64,000 bases of DNA from Euprymna scolopes (Eukaryota), in the NCBI GenBank assembly GCA_053919585.1, contig CM132808.1; one strand, 5' to 3'. Within the stretch, counting starts at the first letter, position 1. Each line of letters opens with the position of its first letter. The notes beneath the pieces were generated by a model that made no database searches, was not told where the DNA came from, and was given only the letters and a program-made list of their open reading frames with translations. Positions 22,661-29,699 of the stretch are shown in pieces. The position numbers and the translations under genes are program-made.

Positions 22661-23238
22661 CTTTTGAAAGTACCGTTTTCAAGGATGTGTGATCTTAATT
22701 ATAATTTAGTATTTTCGCGCTAACATTCTGACGATGTAACACTTGATTTTTTTCAGCATAAAAATTTCATGCAATATTATGTACTAAAGAAAATGCGAAT
22801 GCATGCAATAAAAATAAATTTGTCTAGAGTTGAACGCAACATTTTATCGTTAAAAGTAAATAAATTTTAAACAACTTGGTTTCTCCAACCCTTCGAGACC
22901 TCCAAAGGGCGATTGCAATTGGGAGTCCCTATTTGTCTTCCCATAAGGGCGAAATTAGGGAAAAGCTAAGTACTGCATTGGGACAAATATTAATTGTCCT
23001 AGGCAAGGATTTCTCCTTCCCTAAACAAGGATAGAACAGATAAAGTTGCAGTATCAGAATGGATACAAGTTGAATTATTTATATGAAAAAGTTACATTTT
23101 AACAAATTAAGCACAAAGCCACCAAGACTGTCGGGAGGAAGATTCTAACATTTGTCTAGTCTTCTCTTGGCTAGAATTATCACAATCACCATAATACAGT
23201 TTTTCTTAAAATGTGTTGAGCAATTTTTACGAGTATAT

Positions 23239-26200
23239 TGTCGTCGGCCGATTTCTCGTATCTGAGAATTTCAATTTCCGCTTCCCTCAGTGTTTGGTCT
23301 GAGAAACCATCTGTGATTCAATCTGAACATGGAACACGTGGGCAGAGAAGGCAAGCAATGCTTGGCAGGGGGCGGGGTTGTTCAGCACGATTTTTTTCTT
23401 GCCTGCCTCTTGATCTCTCCCAGTCTTCTTCTTTCTGCTTCGTATCCTTTGATACCATGTATAATAGATTGGCACAACAGGCGCCAATCCTGAGCTGCTG
23501 TTTCCCAGATGTGAAGATCAAATCTAGTATTTTTTGGGGTGGATTTGAGTTGGTCCTTGTATCACTGTAGAGGGTGGCCGATAGATCTTTTTCCTGTGGC
23601 TACTTCCGAGTACAGGGTTTGTCGAGGGAGCCTGTTTTCATCCATTCTGAGGATGTGCCCCAACCAACAGTCTGTGCCTCATGGTGGTGGCCTCAATACT
23701 GCAGCTGTTTGCTCTCAAGAACGCTTGTGTTGGTTACATAGTCATACCATTTGATGTTCAGTATAGCTCGAAGTTTTTGTTGGTGGAATTTTTCAAGTTT
23801 AATGAGATCACTTTGGTATATAGTCCAGGTCTCACACCCGTACAAAAGCGTAGGGATAACAATCGCATGGTATACCATGAGTTTAGTTTTAGAAAGATGT
23901 TTTTTTTTAAGACGTGCTTTGTCAGTTTACCGAAAGCTCCATAGGCGAGGCCAATTCGGCTTTCTATTTCATTCTCAATTGAGCACTTTTTCAATATGGA
24001 GATATGGAAAGTGATCTATTTGCTCAAGAGGAGTGTCATTTATGTGAATACTTATGTCCTTTAAGATGGTGTTGGGTACTGGTTGTACTAACACTTTTGT
24101 CTTCTGATATTAACAGAGAGCCCGAAGTGGTGGTAGGCTGCTGTAAAGTTGTTTATGGATCTCTGGATGTCTTCTTTGGAATAGCAAAGGACTATGTTGT
24201 CATATGCATATTGAAGCTTTGTGATGTGTTGGAATTTCACAAGGTTTTGAGATTTTAGTCTAGCAGGCTTGAAAAGTCCCCCATCATAGCGATGCCTATT
24301 GTCTCCCCCCCCCCGCCCGGGTTATTTGGAGGAAGTTTTTGCAACATTGCAGCAAGATATAAGGAAAAAAGATTAGGCACAAGGACACAGCCTTGTTTTA
24401 GTCCATAGGTAACTGGAAACATTTTTGTTTCCTTTCCCTGGTGCGATACATGTCCTGACATGCTGTCATGCAGTGCCTGGATGCGTTTTACAAAGTGGAT
24501 TGGACAACCAAATTGTTTGACAACTTTCCACATTGCCTCCCTTGGAACGCTACCGAATGCTTTTTTGTAGGTCATACAATACAAGAAAGAGGGGTTTCTG
24601 TTGTTCGCTGCTTTTCTCCTGCAACTGTGTAGCACAAAAAATCATATCTATTGTCCCTGGAGAGGCATGGAAGTCACACTGAGATTCTGGGAGGATTGAT
24701 TCCGTAGTATGCAGGCAAAGATTTTTCCCATTATGGACAAAAGGGCAATCCCACAGAAATTACCACGATTTTCGGTCACCTTTTTTGAAGATGGTTACTA
24801 TTACTGCGTCTTTCAGATCCTTTGGTACTTGACATTCTTCCCACATCTTAAGAATGAGTGAATAGTCTTGTTTTCAGATGTTGTCCACCATGGTGGATAA
24901 GTTCGAAAGGGATATTATCAGGCTTTATTTACTTTCATTTGCTCTATCGTAATCTGAAATTCTGGAAAGGAAGGAGGTGCATTCATCCATAATTGCATTG
25001 GTTACTGTGGGACCATTTTGAGAAAGTCCTCATCTGCAGCAAATTCTTTATTGAGTAGAGTGGCAAAATGCTTCTTCCAACAATCCAGAATTGATTGTGG
25101 ATTGTTGAGGATGGTGGCATTGTCTGCTGCAAGGAGTGTTCCGATTGAGGATCTCATAGGGCCAAAAATTTGTTTTACACCGGCATGGAAATTTCTAAGG
25201 TCACAAGCTTCTGCAAAACCCTCCAATTCTAAAGCTTTCAATTGCCGCCTTCTAGTTTCCATAATCTTGATTGATACTGGTTTTGCAGTTTCTGTAGATG
25301 TTGGTCTTATGCTAGCTTTGAGGGTCTTGTTAATGAGCATGGCGAGCGTTTATCTTTTCTTGAATTAGATTAATTTCAGCAGTTTTCATCAAAAGTCTTG
25401 ATTTTTCTTTTTCTTTAAACTGACTGACTTTGGCTGATTCATTAATGATCTTACTGATTGACAACCATTCTTCTTCCAGGTCGCAAGAATTGGTTAGGTT
25501 TATACAAAGGTGTTTTTCGATGGTGTGTTGGTATTTTGTTTTTACCTCTGTTATGTGAAGTTTTGAGAGGTTATATTTTTTTTTTTTTTTTTGTCTGAGG
25601 TTATTGTTTTAATTCAAATTTGGGCTTCTTTCTGGGGTGTATATTTAACACGTGTGATGACCAGACGGTGGTCAGTCCAACAGCCATCTATACTTAGTGC
25701 TGATTTAGTAATGTGGATAATCCTTTTTATCTTTCTGACAGATGATGAGTCTAAAAGGTGCCAATGCTGAGATCGAGGATGTTTGCACGTGGTCTTAAAT
25801 CTATTTGGAAGCTGGAACTGAGTGTTAGTAATGAATAGCTCAAATTCTGAGCAAAGTCCTAACAACAGGCGGCCGTTTCAGTTGCATTTACCAAATCCAT
25901 GCTTCCTAATAGAGTTCCAGAGTCTATGATCTTTCCCCTCTCTTGCATTAAAGTCACGCAACAGCATTAATTTGTCGCGTGGTGGGGCTCTGGTAATAAG
26001 CTTGCCAAGCTGCTGGTAAAATTCTCGTTTCACTTCACTGTCGGCGTCTAGGGTTGGTGCATATGCCGAGATGACAGTTATGAAGTTATCAGAAGGCAGT
26101 GGGACTCTATGAGACATAAGTCTCTCATTTACAACTGTTGGTGTGAGCTGATAATTATGCACGATATGTGACTTTATAGCGGAGCAAACTCTGTGTATTT

Positions 26201-27388
26201 TTTTTTTCATCTTTCTCCCTTCCCTTCTAAAAGAAGGTGTATCCTGAGCCCTTTTCTTTCAGCTTACCCTCCACTAAGAGTTTGGTCTCTCAGTGCAGCA
26301 ATATCCATGTTCAGAGTCGTGAGTTCCTTTGAGACCAGTGCAGTTCGTCATGCTGGTCTGTCTGCGTCATTGAGGTCTAACAGGGTTCCATGCACCAAAG
26401 GTGAGATATGTGGATTTGTTTTCTGAATTTTTCTGGTTTTGACTGCAAAATAGAGTATTCCACTGGATGCGGCTTTCTAGTTAGGCACAGTTGTGACCTC
26501 CAATTTTTAGCCTACATTTTTCTAGGGCCTTCCCTATTCAGGACAGCGGTTGCCCTCAATAGGCCTGCCCAGTCATAGACGCAGGACCAAACCTCTGGAT
26601 AGTCACAGTTCCAAAAGAGGGCGACCATCACGCGTCCACCACCAGCATGCAGGTCCAAACTAGGAGCTTCGAGTTTCACCAAAACCTTCTTCCTTCGCCC
26701 CGTCACCACTGGTCTTGTTGTAGAAGAGAGAAGAAAAAAGGAAGTTAAGCAGTAAAAGAGAAAATATAACCAGAGGAAAGAAGGAAAAGCCATTGGCATA
26801 TGAATTTGTTTAGGGTGGGCATCAACATGCCAGGGAGAAACCCACACACTGTGGCTCCCAAACCTTCCTTCACGGCACTTGTGGGGGTGACGTGCGATAT
26901 CAGGGAAAGGGGGTTGCAACGGACAGCCGGAAAAGAAAATAGTTTGTTTGTTTGTTAACCGCCTCATAGCCAGTCCATCTGGCTATAGGGATTTTTTAAA
27001 ATCAGTTTTCCTTCTAGCCTTATCCCAGCTAAGGGACCCCCGCTAGGCAGCAGAGCAGTGGTTGGTGGGGTGTCAGGACGTGTCCACACGTTGGTTGGCC
27101 ATGGCATAGCACCTCTGAGGCCCCCCTACTGCTCCGAGACCCCCTGACATTTAGCCTGGTGCTGCAAGACACCAGTATCCGTGTGTAACCATGAGGAGGC
27201 GTGTAGAGGTCTTAACACTGGAGAGGCTAATTATACTGGCAAAGAAGGCTTACGCATTCTGCTTCTTATTCATTGAAAGGCTAGCCAGTAGCAGGAGCTG
27301 GAAGTGAAAAGTATGCAAGCAAGAACTTGCACTAACGCTGCTGCAGTGCTGCACTAGACGCATCACAATGCCCTGTGTTTTCACACAC
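23239..27388 (-). mobile_element. Full-length RTE-clade LINE with a decayed ORF
   Basis: APE (ISAYAPTL, LLRDFNAR, HPRSQHWHLLD, TDHRLV) and RT (GLKQGCVLVP, LLYGCETW) remnants; (CGA)-like 3' tail; TSD GAGTATAT at 23231-23238 and 27389-27396. Confidence 0.92.
27137..27388 (-). ncRNA. HDV-like self-cleaving ribozyme at the RTE 5' end, partly decayed
   Basis: Minus-strand order: P1 GTGTGTG, 169-nt J1/2, P2 AGACCTCTACAC, P3 GCC, L3 TCCTCAT, P3' GGT, P1' TACACAC, GG, P4 CTGGTG/CACCAG, J4/2 GCTAA, P2' ATGTCAGGGGGTCT. Confidence 0.82.
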
Positions 27389-27420
27389 GAGTATATATGG
27401 ATGTACAAATAAGCATATTT

Positions 27421-27503
27421 ACCCCGGTTCTCATTGGATCACTAAAGTTAAGCAACCTTAAGCATGGTCAGTACCAGATAGGTTACTATTTGGACACTAT
27501 ATA
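27421..27503 (+). pseudogene. Decayed 5S rRNA-derived sequence (5S pseudogene or SINE3 head)
   Basis: CCGGTTCTCATTGGATCACTAAAGTTAAGCAACCTTAAGCATGGTCAGTACCAGATAGGTTAC resembles the metazoan 5S core (GATCACCGAAGTTAAGC...GGTTAGTACTTGGATGGGTGAC) with many substitutions. Confidence 0.7.
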
Positions 27504-29699
27504 GGTAAAATTTTCCTTTAAGGCCGTTTCATCCTAGAAGATAGAAATATATTTTTCTTGTAGATTTCGTTGTGCTAAAAACGAATCTGTGTTTCCATCA
27601 CAGAGAAAAAGTCATGATATGAAGAAATTACTTTTTGAAAGAGTGGGTGATCACTTTTCTATATAAACTTTACTTAAAATGAGCACCCACTTTCTGGCCA
27701 CTTAGTGAATGGGCGGCATTTTTTTTGTTTGTTTTTTGGCTAAAAAGGTTTTGTTTTTTTCTTTCAATAAAGACGAGGACATTGAAGAACAAAAAAAAAA
27801 TCAAAAATCTGTATGCAAGTATGTGTAATTTCTTATGTTATCAGTGGTGATCATTTCTGTATGCGTAAGCGCGTGCATATTTTTGCATGTCTTATGTAAA
27901 ATTTCAAATGTTTAGACCCAAAATTGGCTGAATAGTTTGTTAGAGACCGCAAAGGTCAAATCTTTTGAACTTTGACCACTTAGCACCCAAATTTTCAGCC
28001 AAAAACCGATTAAAAAGCTTGCCTTATGTCAGAATGAACTTTATGCAAAATTTCAAATGTTTAAACCAAAAATTGGCTAAGTAATTTGGTAGAGACTGCA
28101 GGTTAAATTTTTTAACTTTGACTCCTTAACATTTATTTTGGACTCAAATCAAAAAGTTTGATCCCTGTCCAAGAAACCTACATCTAAAATTTTAAGTGTT
28201 TAGACCCAAAATTTCACACTTTTACAAACTTTTTTACGTTGGCTTTAACTCTTTTCATGAATGAAAAAAAAAAAAAAAAAAAAGTAACTAAACCATTTAT
28301 TGATAATTTGTCACTTTTACAAACATTTACATTGGCTTAACTCTATGAATATTAAAAAGAAAAACGTTATTAAACATTTAATTTCTCACTTACATTTTTA
28401 ATTTACATGAGCAGAACTTTTTGGTAAATATTTACATTTAGGTCCATCGCCACAACTCTTTTTAAACAACGACTTTTCTTGATAAATAAAATCTACTTCT
28501 CGGCAACGGACATTGAACTCCCCTTTAAAAAAAAAAAAAAAAAAAAAATTTGCAGATGGGTATGCTGACAAATATCAGTTAAATTTTGCAAATATTTTTT
28601 TCACCCCCGCCCCCTCCAAATGGTGTTTATTCTGAAATCCGTTCTTAACATGGGGAGGTTGAGGGTGTTTATTTTGAAAGCCGTTCTTAACATTTGTGAA
28701 GGTGGACCTAATGTAAAAAAAAAAAAAATAATAATAATAATTAAACCATTTACTGGTAATTTCTCACTTTTACAAATATTTTTTAATTTACATGCGCGGA
28801 TGAAGAACATCGTTGAGTGGTGCGAAAACAAAGCATTTTTGTAATAAACTTTGGGTTTGTTTTACTATACACATAAACAAAAATATAACAAACGTCATCA
28901 AAGTCAAGAGAAGTTAATTTTCTACCTAATTGGACAAGTTTTTTGTGTTTTTCTTTAATGTAAAATGTTTATTCAGTTCGAAAATCCAGTAATGTTGAAT
29001 GCTGCCGGGGAACAAAAGATGGCTGCGATGTGTTTGAAGACTCAATAATCAATTCAAAATAAAAACTAAACAAAATGGTGATAGAAAGCCACCCAATAAA
29101 TGTCCGGATTATATTTCTTTACTACTTTTACAAACTATTTACTCACGTTGATTTATTTAATCAATTTTTTTTTTTTGCACCATTCAAAATTTTTAAATTA
29201 TAAAATTAAAATAAATTAAAAAGAAAACTAAACAATTATTTTTTTTTTTTTATTACCATATTTATTAAACTTTTTTTCTTTTTTTTTTTTCCGGAGTTTA
29301 TGTACTTATTAACAGGAAAATTGGTGAATGTTATTTTCAAGTTTAAAGTTTTACGATACCTGCGGTATTTTTCTTTTTAACTTTACTTTTATTTTGCCAT
29401 AACAAAATGAAAGCAAGCTAAAACAAAACAAATTTGGTGTTTATGCACTTACGTTACCGTTATTTAGTTAGTTATTTTTTAATGGTTTAAGTGCTTACCT
29501 CAATGTTTGAATTTTTTTTTTTTTTTTTTTTTTAAAGGAAAATTGTTGAAAGTCAAAATTAGCACTTGTGGCGATAAACAAAAAGCTTTAGCGAGTACTA
29601 CCTCTCATGGAATGTCGTAGATCGAAACAAATGTTATTTCGTGCTAGTTTTTAATTAATATTTTCAAGTTTGATTAAAGTTTAACTTTTTATTAAATTG

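What the first reader, a model, noticed from the sequence alone, without database searches (positions are those of the whole stretch)
27137..27396. HDV-like ribozyme whose cleavage site is exactly the RTE 5' end, with a 169-nt J1/2 insert
Seen: every nested double-pseudoknot element in order on the minus strand, including the P1.1 CC/GG pair and the catalytic C of GCTAA (27154). The P1 5' strand GTGTGTG starts at 27388, immediately beside the TSD GAGTATAT, so the inserted RNA began at the predicted self-cleavage site (2 bp of microhomology blurs this slightly). L3 reads TCCTCAT where TCCTCGT is expected, a CpG-type change at the metal-binding G, and P2 has a bulge. A local TGTG-AAAA-CACA hairpin could compete with P1. 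Established: HDV-like ribozymes process the 5' ends of R2, RTE and other non-LTR elements. Inference: this family uses a long-J1/2 variant that descriptor searches may miss.
Basis: partly seen in the sequence, partly recalled or inferred. Interest (0 to 1): 0.75.

Follow-up and report, generated by a model that had tools for sequence, protein, structure and literature searches.

The report
Self-cutting RNA heading a jumping gene
The first ~250 bases of this decayed 4.15-kb RTE-type retrotransposon copy are a worn relic of an HDV-type self-cleaving RNA that would cut at the element's first base. The device is already known from mosquito RTE and insect R2 elements, so this is a solid but ordinary new example.

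Summary
On the minus strand, 27388-27141 carries every HDV-like element in order, and the P1 5' strand GTGTGTG starts directly after the target-site duplication GAGTATAT.

The window copy is an old, dead copy. Its L3 has G->A, P2 has lost a base, and a J1/2 helix is broken.

The family consensus (more than 700 candidate copies) is a textbook core:
- P2: 10 bp
- P3: GCC/GGC
- L3: UCCUCGU
- P1 3' strand: CACACAC, followed by GG
- P4: 7 bp
- J4/2: GGCUAA

Copies whose ends are fixed by target-site duplications start at the G of GTGTGTG.

The long-range P1 is supported by a second, young family in the same genome. Its core has ACATCAC in place of CACACAC, and the exact complement GTGATGT lies 206 nt upstream in 199 matches (0 in the control). 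That makes four compensatory pairs out of seven.

The ~173-nt J1/2 is predicted to be closed by a helix, GGCACUG/CAGUGUU, like the P1.2 domain of the mosquito RTE ribozyme drz-Agam-2.

Long J1/2 inserts and RTE 5' ribozymes are published, and this scan has already reported the same device elsewhere in this genome. It is a new member of a known kind. Cleavage itself is untested.

The parts
23239..27388 (-). Decayed full-length non-LTR (RTE-type) retrotransposon copy, 4150 bp
   Evidence: The family homology ends at both boundaries. Pfam RVT_1 matches 24255-24635 and there is a weak endonuclease hit at 25878-26210. The ORF is broken into pieces.
27389..27396 (.). Target-site duplication GAGTATAT, 5' side
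23231..23238 (.). Target-site duplication GAGTATAT, 3' side, just after the element tail ...GGCCGACGACA
   Evidence: Other copies end in (ACG)n.
27382..27388 (-). P1 5' strand GTGTGTG; predicted cleavage is 5' of G27388
   Evidence: In the family the first 7 nt are GTGTGTG in most copies.
27210..27381 (-). J1/2 insert, 172 nt
   Evidence: Its predicted closing helix (27366-27372 with 27214-27220) is GGCATTG/CAGTGTT here. It is broken by a C->T change, with pair probability 0.04 against a family mean of 0.76.
27201..27209 (-). P2 5' strand CCTCTACAC (consensus CCCCTGACAT; one G deleted here)
27188..27200 (-). P3 GCC / L3 TCCTCAT / P3 3' strand GGT (consensus GCC / TCCTCGT / GGC)
27179..27187 (-). 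P1 3' strand TACACAC (consensus CACACAC) followed by GG of P1.1
27156..27175 (-). P4 stem-loop CTGGTGT-CTTGCA-GCACCAG
27141..27155 (-). J4/2 GCTAA with the presumed catalytic C at 27154, then the P2 3' strand ATGTCAGGGG

Best explanation
The element family carries an HDV-like (nested double-pseudoknot) self-cleaving ribozyme as the first ~250 nt of its 5' UTR.

These elements have no promoter of their own, so they are transcribed as part of a longer host or read-through transcript. The RNA folds so that its first seven bases (GUGUGUG) pair with CACACAC about 210 nt downstream to form P1. P2, P3, P1.1 and P4 build the catalytic core around the C of GGCUAA. The chain is then cut just 5' of G1. 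That releases an RNA whose 5' end is the element's first base, and this RNA is what gets reverse-transcribed into new copies.

The ~173-nt J1/2 between P1 and P2 is a folded peripheral domain. Its closing helix (GGCACUG/CAGUGUU) brings P1 and P2 together, as P1.2 does in drz-Agam-2.

The window copy is an old insertion of this family whose ribozyme has decayed and is probably inactive.

Shown: the motif, the family conservation, the 5' ends, and P1 covariation between two families.
Inferred: catalysis, the role of J1/2, and co-transcription.
For: 1. All elements are present in order in the window. They are cleaner in the consensus of 27-29 copies: 10-bp P2, GCC/GGC, UCCUCGU, CACACAC, GG, 7-bp P4, GGCUAA. 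Across copies 92.4% of cells are paired, against 23-46% when the partners are slid.

2. 5' ends. Homology of the other 39 top-scoring copies (of 738 candidates) starts within about 10 nt of the G; most alignments start right at it (query positions 32-33), and most later starts (position 41) are BLAST trimming at the leader indel. Copies with clear target-site duplications (L038, L048, L039, L032, L035 and the window) start at the G of the leader.

3. Covariation of the distant P1. A second family has the P1 3' strand ACATCAC (254 core matches, 0 in the reversed control). It has GTGATGT exactly 206 nt upstream in 199 matches, 0 in the control. Its following leader is homologous to this family's. 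Against GTGTGTG/CACACAC, four of seven pairs are changed on both sides and still pair.

4. That family's P2 3' strand differs (GTGTATGTGGG). A wobble-tolerant complement of its outer 7 nt sits at the expected place in 255 copies, 0 in the control.

5. The J1/2 closing helix has a mean pair probability of 0.76, and 0.85 or more in 20 of 27 copies.

6. Published precedent. HDV-like ribozymes cut at the 5' junction of RTE, R4 and L1 clade elements (PMC3774820, Discussion). They occur in RTE and baggins elements that lack promoters (PMC6765202). Long structured J1/2 domains activate the mosquito ribozyme (PMC4908430).
Against: - No cleavage assay and no RNA 5'-end data. The laid RNA-seq contigs cover the core and J1/2, but the 5' end was skipped as a repeat.
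- There is no covariation within the family, as expected for neutrally decaying copies.
- The 5' leader is a GT run whose length varies in steps of 2 (10-18 nt). So P1 complementarity in this family alone is low-complexity evidence.
- Some copies have one P1 mismatch (GCGTGTG, GTGTGCG).
- For the sister family, the inner three P2 pairs and the outer P3 pair could not be confirmed.
- The J1/2 folding energy is not better than that of shuffles (z -1.4 to +1.1).
- RNAalifold prefers a competing helix between leader nt 7-16 and the P2/P3 5' strands.
- All 20 long copies examined have broken ORFs, so this family is extinct.
Confidence: 0.85

Rival explanations
1. It is a compact HDV-like ribozyme that uses a local P1 (GUGU at 27218-27215, just upstream of P2) and cuts about 170 nt inside the element. 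On this reading the 5'-terminal GTGTGTG is unrelated.
For: The only Rfam hit (HDV-F-prausnitzii, 27143-27219, 21.9 bits, E 0.23) aligns this way.
Against: - The local helix has only 4 contiguous pairs, against 7 for the distal one.
- Such a cut would discard the first 170 nt, yet the top-scoring full-length copies retain them.
- The distal P1 covaries in the sister family.
- The local GUGUU is better explained as the 3' strand of the J1/2 closing helix.
Confidence: 0.04
2. The fold is real and conserved, but in this lineage it serves mainly as a protein-binding or translation-initiation (IRES-like) structure of the 5' UTR. Self-cleavage would be weak or lost, and 5' ends would be set by other means.
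For: HDV-like ribozymes of R2 and L1Tc are reported to promote translation and to bind the element's protein (PMC6765202). The very long J1/2 is expected to slow folding unless it is well structured (PMC4908430). The J1/2 energy is not better than shuffles.
Against: The catalytic-core nucleotides that matter only for chemistry (the C of GGCUAA, L3 UCCUCGU, the GG of P1.1) are conserved in both families. Element 5' ends coincide with G1.
Confidence: 0.08
3. It is a chance resemblance. A GT-rich 5' end and a CA-rich internal stretch mimic P1, and the rest is a fortuitous match to a loose descriptor.
For: P1 in this family is low-complexity. There is no Rfam hit at gathering score.
Against: Every core element is in place, including the invariant L3 and J4/2 letters, and is conserved across hundreds of copies. 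Reversed-pattern controls gave 0 against 254, 199 and 255. The sister family has a non-repetitive P1 with four compensatory pairs.
Confidence: 0.03

Closest known systems
drz-Agam-2 HDV-like ribozymes of Anopheles gambiae RTE elements (Webb et al. 2009; Ruminski et al. 2011; PMC4908430)
   Same: An HDV-like double pseudoknot at the 5' end of an RTE-type element. Cleavage is at the RNA's first base. There is a long J1/2 insert with a helix that brings P1 and P2 together, and an extended P2 (10 bp here, 12 bp there).
   Different: There is no detectable sequence relationship: no Rfam drz-Agam hit even at E 10. The host is described in the scan's notes as a mollusc. J1/2 is ~173 nt (206-nt P1-to-L3 gap in the sister family). 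I could not read the original papers to compare insert lengths. P1 is a GU repeat.
R2 element ribozyme (Eickbush & Eickbush 2010; PMC3774820)
   Same: An HDV-like ribozyme in the first ~184 nt of a non-LTR element. It releases the element RNA from a co-transcript, and cleavage is at or near the 5' junction.
   Different: R2 is site-specific in 28S rDNA and uses a restriction-like endonuclease. This element is dispersed, is AP-endonuclease type, and prefers AT-rich or (AT)n sites.
L1Tc / ingi Pr77 HDV-like ribozyme (PMC4035085)
   Same: A 5'-terminal HDV-like ribozyme of a LINE that frees it from longer transcripts.
   Different: Compact (77 nt), with a short J1/2, in a trypanosomatid L1-clade element.
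HDV and CPEB3 ribozymes; Rfam HDV-F-prausnitzii (RF02682)
   Same: The same core letters: L3 UCCUCG, the GG of P1.1, and C in J4/2 followed by (U/G)AA.
   Different: Those have J1/2 of a few nt. The Rfam models therefore cannot place the distant P1 and score this RNA below threshold (21.9 against 44 bits).

Membership tests
HDV-like self-cleaving ribozyme | Five helices in nested double-pseudoknot order: P1, P2, P3, P1.1, P4 | tested here: met
   Window reading. In the family alignment, 92.4% of 778 cells are paired against 23-46% in slid controls.
HDV-like self-cleaving ribozyme | Catalytic C in J4/2 directly after P4 (C75 equivalent) | tested here: met
   GGCTAA is nearly invariant in the family, with C at 27154 in the window. 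The sister family has the same GGCTAA.
HDV-like self-cleaving ribozyme | L3 with the conserved U...CG (metal-binding G.U) and CC pairing to the GG of J1/4 | tested here: met
   Met in the consensus of both families, TCCTCGT. Not met in the window copy itself, where G->A at 27192.
HDV-like self-cleaving ribozyme | Base-pair covariation supporting the helices | tested here: met
   P1: four of seven pairs are changed on both sides between the two families. P4: one U-A to G-C exchange, by eye. P2: outer 7 pairs supported, inner 3 not. None within the family.
HDV-like self-cleaving ribozyme | Site-specific self-scission 5' of G1 | not testable with these tools
   Only indirect evidence: element 5' ends defined by target-site duplications coincide with G1. 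The RNA-seq lay was uninformative at the 5' end.
RTE clade of non-LTR retrotransposons | [quoted passage not shown] | tested here: met
   RVT_1 at E 1.5e-34 in a better copy and 4e-9 in the window. Weak Exo_endo_phos_2 at E 0.015. The 3' end is ...GGCCGACG(ACG)n directly before the target-site duplication.
RTE clade of non-LTR retrotransposons | Phylogenetic placement of the RT within the RTE clade | not tested
   No reference set was at hand. The atlas look-up gave only generic RT clusters. I ran no further search on this.

The most novel reading that the evidence does not exclude
Because P1 of this family is a (GU)n run, the seven-base CACACAC strand could pair in several registers. The ribozyme would then set the element's 5' end in 2-nt steps; leaders of 10, 14, 16 and 18 nt are seen. 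Each new copy would seed a (GT)n tract that can expand at the 5' junction. Several copies carry (AT)n(GT)n arrays exactly there. A ribozyme strand would then be a source of 5'-junction microsatellites, alongside the known 3'-end microsatellites of RTEs. Separately, the 170-200-nt J1/2, partly conserved between the two families, might be a functional domain (protein binding or translation) rather than a mere spacer.
Probability: 0.15. Interest if true: 0.5.

Novelty: new member of a known kind. Interest (0 to 1): 0.3.

Why it matters
[quoted passage not shown] The host is a lineage (called a mollusc in the scan's notes) for which the held literature reports no such RTE ribozyme.

It shows that Rfam-type models miss these RNAs because P1 lies about 200 nt from the core.

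It explains how a promoter-less, high-copy LINE family obtains a defined 5' end.

For annotation, the ribozyme start is a precise marker of full-length RTE copies in this 5.9-Gb genome. The two families also give a natural pair for testing long-range P1 pairing and J1/2 'pinch' domains.

It does not change what is known about the mechanism.

Tried and rejected
- **Rfam at gathering score.** Nothing in the window. At E<=10 there was only a sub-threshold hit with a wrong local P1. Four consensus-like loci gave only microsatellite-driven miRNA hits.
- **Within-family covariation.** None, and shuffles do as well. Copies decay neutrally, so this says nothing either way.
- **J1/2 stability against shuffles.** Not significant in six copies. 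An earlier script timed out.
- **Fetching divergent core hits from the model search** (a block of identical 85.2-bit hits and weaker ones down to 39 bits). Those families were not examined.
- **Sister-family P2:**
  - the same as this family's within 3 mismatches: 0 hits;
  - exact Watson-Crick complement: 0;
  - 11-nt wobble complement in a wrong register: 0;
  - 10 bp plus the outer P3 pair: 0;
  - Only the outer 7 pairs are supported.
- **P1 gap of 160-190 nt in the sister family.** 0 hits. The gap is 206 nt.
- **RNA evidence.** PolyA RNA-seq contigs from two runs and a probable RNA run cover the family's core and J1/2. Positions 1763-1860 of the locus (the 5' end) were skipped as repeat, and contigs cannot show ends. 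A single-cell oligo-dT raw-read run gave 11 reads. There is no verdict on cleavage or expression.
- **No copy of the sister family** lies in the window or in the fetched loci.
- **Original papers.** Ruminski 2011 and Webb 2009 are not held. Their content is cited only through papers that are held.
- **5S rRNA-like hit beside the junction** (24.8 bits against a gathering score of 38). The neighbouring repeat family does not include it. I treat it as a weak hit or lone fragment.

Full report
**What is in the window.**
On the minus strand a 4150-bp non-LTR retrotransposon copy runs from 27388 down to 23239. The 8-bp duplication GAGTATAT flanks it at 27389-27396 and 23231-23238. It encodes reverse transcriptase (Pfam RVT_1) and a weakly recognisable AP-type endonuclease. 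The ORF is broken into many pieces. The element ends in ...GGCCGACGACA, and other copies end in (ACG)n. One ORF with endonuclease and RT, a 5' UTR, and a minimal 3' UTR of simple repeats is the published description of RTE elements (PMC2887409). I did not place the RT in a tree.

**The motif.**
From the first base the minus strand reads as follows:
- P1 GTGTGTG (27388-27382)
- a 172-nt J1/2
- P2 CCTCTACAC
- P3 GCC
- L3 TCCTCAT
- GGT
- P1 3' strand TACACAC
- GG
- ATA
- P4 CTGGTGT-CTTGCA-GCACCAG
- GGCTAA, with C at 27154
- P2 3' strand ATGTCAGGGG (to 27141)

**The family.**
A search of the 5.9-Gb genome with the 5' 320 nt found 738 candidates. Most of the 39 other scored copies (84-90% identical) begin to match right at the G (query positions 32-33). 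Most later starts (position 41) reflect alignment trimming at the leader indel, and a few copies are 5' truncated. Alignments of 27-29 copies give a cleaner consensus than the window:
- P2 CCCCTGACAT/ATGTCAGGGG (10 bp)
- P3 GCC/GGC
- L3 TCCTCGT
- P1 3' strand CACACAC
- GG
- P4 CTGGTGC/GCACCAG
- GGCTAA

So the window's L3 A (27192), its P2 bulge (a deleted G), and its G.U pairs in P3 and P1 are decay of this one copy. Across copies 92.4% of the pair cells form standard pairs, against 23-46% when the partners are slid by 1-3 columns. There is no covariation within the family, which is expected when copies decay neutrally after insertion. A covariance model of the core finds one hit in the window (103.7 bits) and 150 scored hits in the genome.

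**The 5' end.**
I fetched twenty long copies. In those with recognisable target-site duplications (L038, L048, L039, L032, L035 and the window), the element starts at the G of a leader GTGTGTG(C/T)GTGTATAGAAACACAGGG. L034 carries three extra A's between the duplication and that G. The GT part varies in length. There are 10, 14, 16 or 18 nt before AAACAC, always in steps of two and always starting with G. The window copy has the short form, and a small deletion merges the P1 strand with the next hairpin. In most copies the first seven bases are GTGTGTG; some have one mismatch.

**Is the distant P1 real?**
In this family P1 is a GT repeat, which on its own is weak evidence. I therefore looked for related cores whose P1 3' strand differs. 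The pattern returned 254 matches and 0 for the reversed control. All listed matches are one identical sequence, from a second, young family. It has L3 TCCTCGT, GGT, ACATCAC, GG, a remodelled P4 and GGCTAA.

The model predicts that this family starts with GTGATGT. That heptamer lies exactly 206 nt upstream of the core in 199 matches, 0 in the control. None was found at 160-190 nt. It is followed by GGTGTGTTGCACACAGGGC, which is homologous to this family's leader. Compared with GTGTGTG/CACACAC, positions 4-7 are changed on both strands and all still pair. Given homology, the chance of this is about 0.4%. Where extra upstream letters were printed, they differ between copies, as expected if G1 is that family's first base. 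This is probably the 276-nt ribozyme that an earlier follow-up of this scan reported (s1-241403).

For P2 of that family, the 3' strand reads GTGTATGTGGG. A wobble-tolerant complement of its outer seven bases lies 4 nt before the L3 block in 255 copies, 0 in the control. Stricter versions failed. So P2 is different in sequence and at least partly compensated, but its inner part is unresolved.

**J1/2.**
Long J1/2 inserts are known. The mosquito RTE ribozyme drz-Agam-2 has a structured J1/2 (P1.2) that, with short linkers and an extended P2, speeds cleavage by nearly three orders of magnitude by pinching P1 and P2 together (PMC4908430).

Here the J1/2 folded alone has no unusual energy. However, one helix recurs. 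GGCACUG, 17 nt after P1, pairs with CAGUGUU, 4 nt before P2, and closes the whole insert. Its mean predicted pair probability is 0.76, and it is 0.85 or more in 20 of 27 copies. In the window copy a C->T change drops it to 0.04. The 3' strand of this helix is the 'local P1' that the Rfam F. prausnitzii model used for its sub-threshold hit. That reading gives only four contiguous pairs and would cut off 170 nt that the full-length copies retain, so I reject it. RNAalifold, which cannot model pseudoknots, prefers a helix between leader nt 7-16 and the P2/P3 5' strands. This could be a competing, inactive fold.

**What is not shown.**
Cleavage was not tested. PolyA RNA-seq contigs contain family sequence across the core and J1/2. 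The tool skipped the repeat-like 5' end, and contigs cannot show RNA ends. All twenty long copies have broken ORFs, so this family is extinct. The window ribozyme carries a change at the metal-binding G of L3 and is probably dead. That G.U role is from my knowledge of HDV ribozyme structures and was not tested.

**Comparison and novelty.**
HDV-like ribozymes that cut at the 5' junction are published for RTE, R4, L1Tc and R2 elements (PMC3774820; PMC6765202). So are long structured J1/2 domains (PMC4908430). I found no paper in the held library on such ribozymes in mollusc RTEs. The scan has already noted and followed up the same device at other places of this genome. This is a new member of a known kind, well supported by sequence and cross-family covariation.

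The only mildly new angle is that a (GU)n P1 could slip in register. That could explain 2-nt steps in the 5' ends and (GT)n arrays at 5' junctions. This is speculative.

Noticed in passing
L012, L013, L018, L019, L022, L027, L051 (5' flanks); L041, L042, L046, L047, L050 (3' flanks): About a third of the family copies sit inside (AT)n arrays. These copies often carry an expanded (GT)n run exactly at the 5' junction, giving compound (AT)n(GT)n microsatellites. The window's own target (CCATATATACTC) is also TA-rich. This suggests a TA-repeat target preference and growth of a microsatellite from the ribozyme's P1 strand. RTE-linked microsatellites are published for the 3' end only (PMC2887409).
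   Followed up: partly
window 27397-27513 (+): There is a sub-threshold 5S rRNA match (24.8 bits, gathering score 38, E 0.021) starting right after the 5' target-site duplication. By eye it shares the GATC..AAG.TAAGCA and TGGT.AGTAC blocks of 5S. It is not part of the neighbouring repeat family, so it is at most a lone decayed 5S fragment.
   Followed up: partly
window ~27500-27720 (+): A ~215-bp interspersed repeat with 2340 candidate copies in the genome (79-86% identical). Its kind was not determined.
   Followed up: partly
L008/L037 and L016/L044, upstream of the element start: Two copies share an upstream segment (GGGGTTGCAA.GGACAGCCGGAAAAG...). It matches positions ~434-632 of the element itself, once inverted and once direct. 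These are rearranged or nested copies, not a longer 5' end.
   Followed up: partly
genome places, e.g. G000:C1:106072158-106072256 and eleven others: Twelve core-model hits share an identical score (85.2 bits, 99 nt), and there are weaker hits down to 39 bits. These are probably further RTE families with related ribozyme cores.
   Followed up: no
alignment A2, columns 14-23 with 199-207 (window about 27382-27375 with 27206-27198): RNAalifold's best nested fold pairs the leader just after P1 with the 5' strands of P2/P3. This excludes the ribozyme fold and may be a competing inactive conformer.
   Followed up: no
window, whole: The octamer GAGTATAT occurs 9 times against 1.4 expected. This probably reflects TA-rich simple sequence and was not examined.
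   Followed up: no
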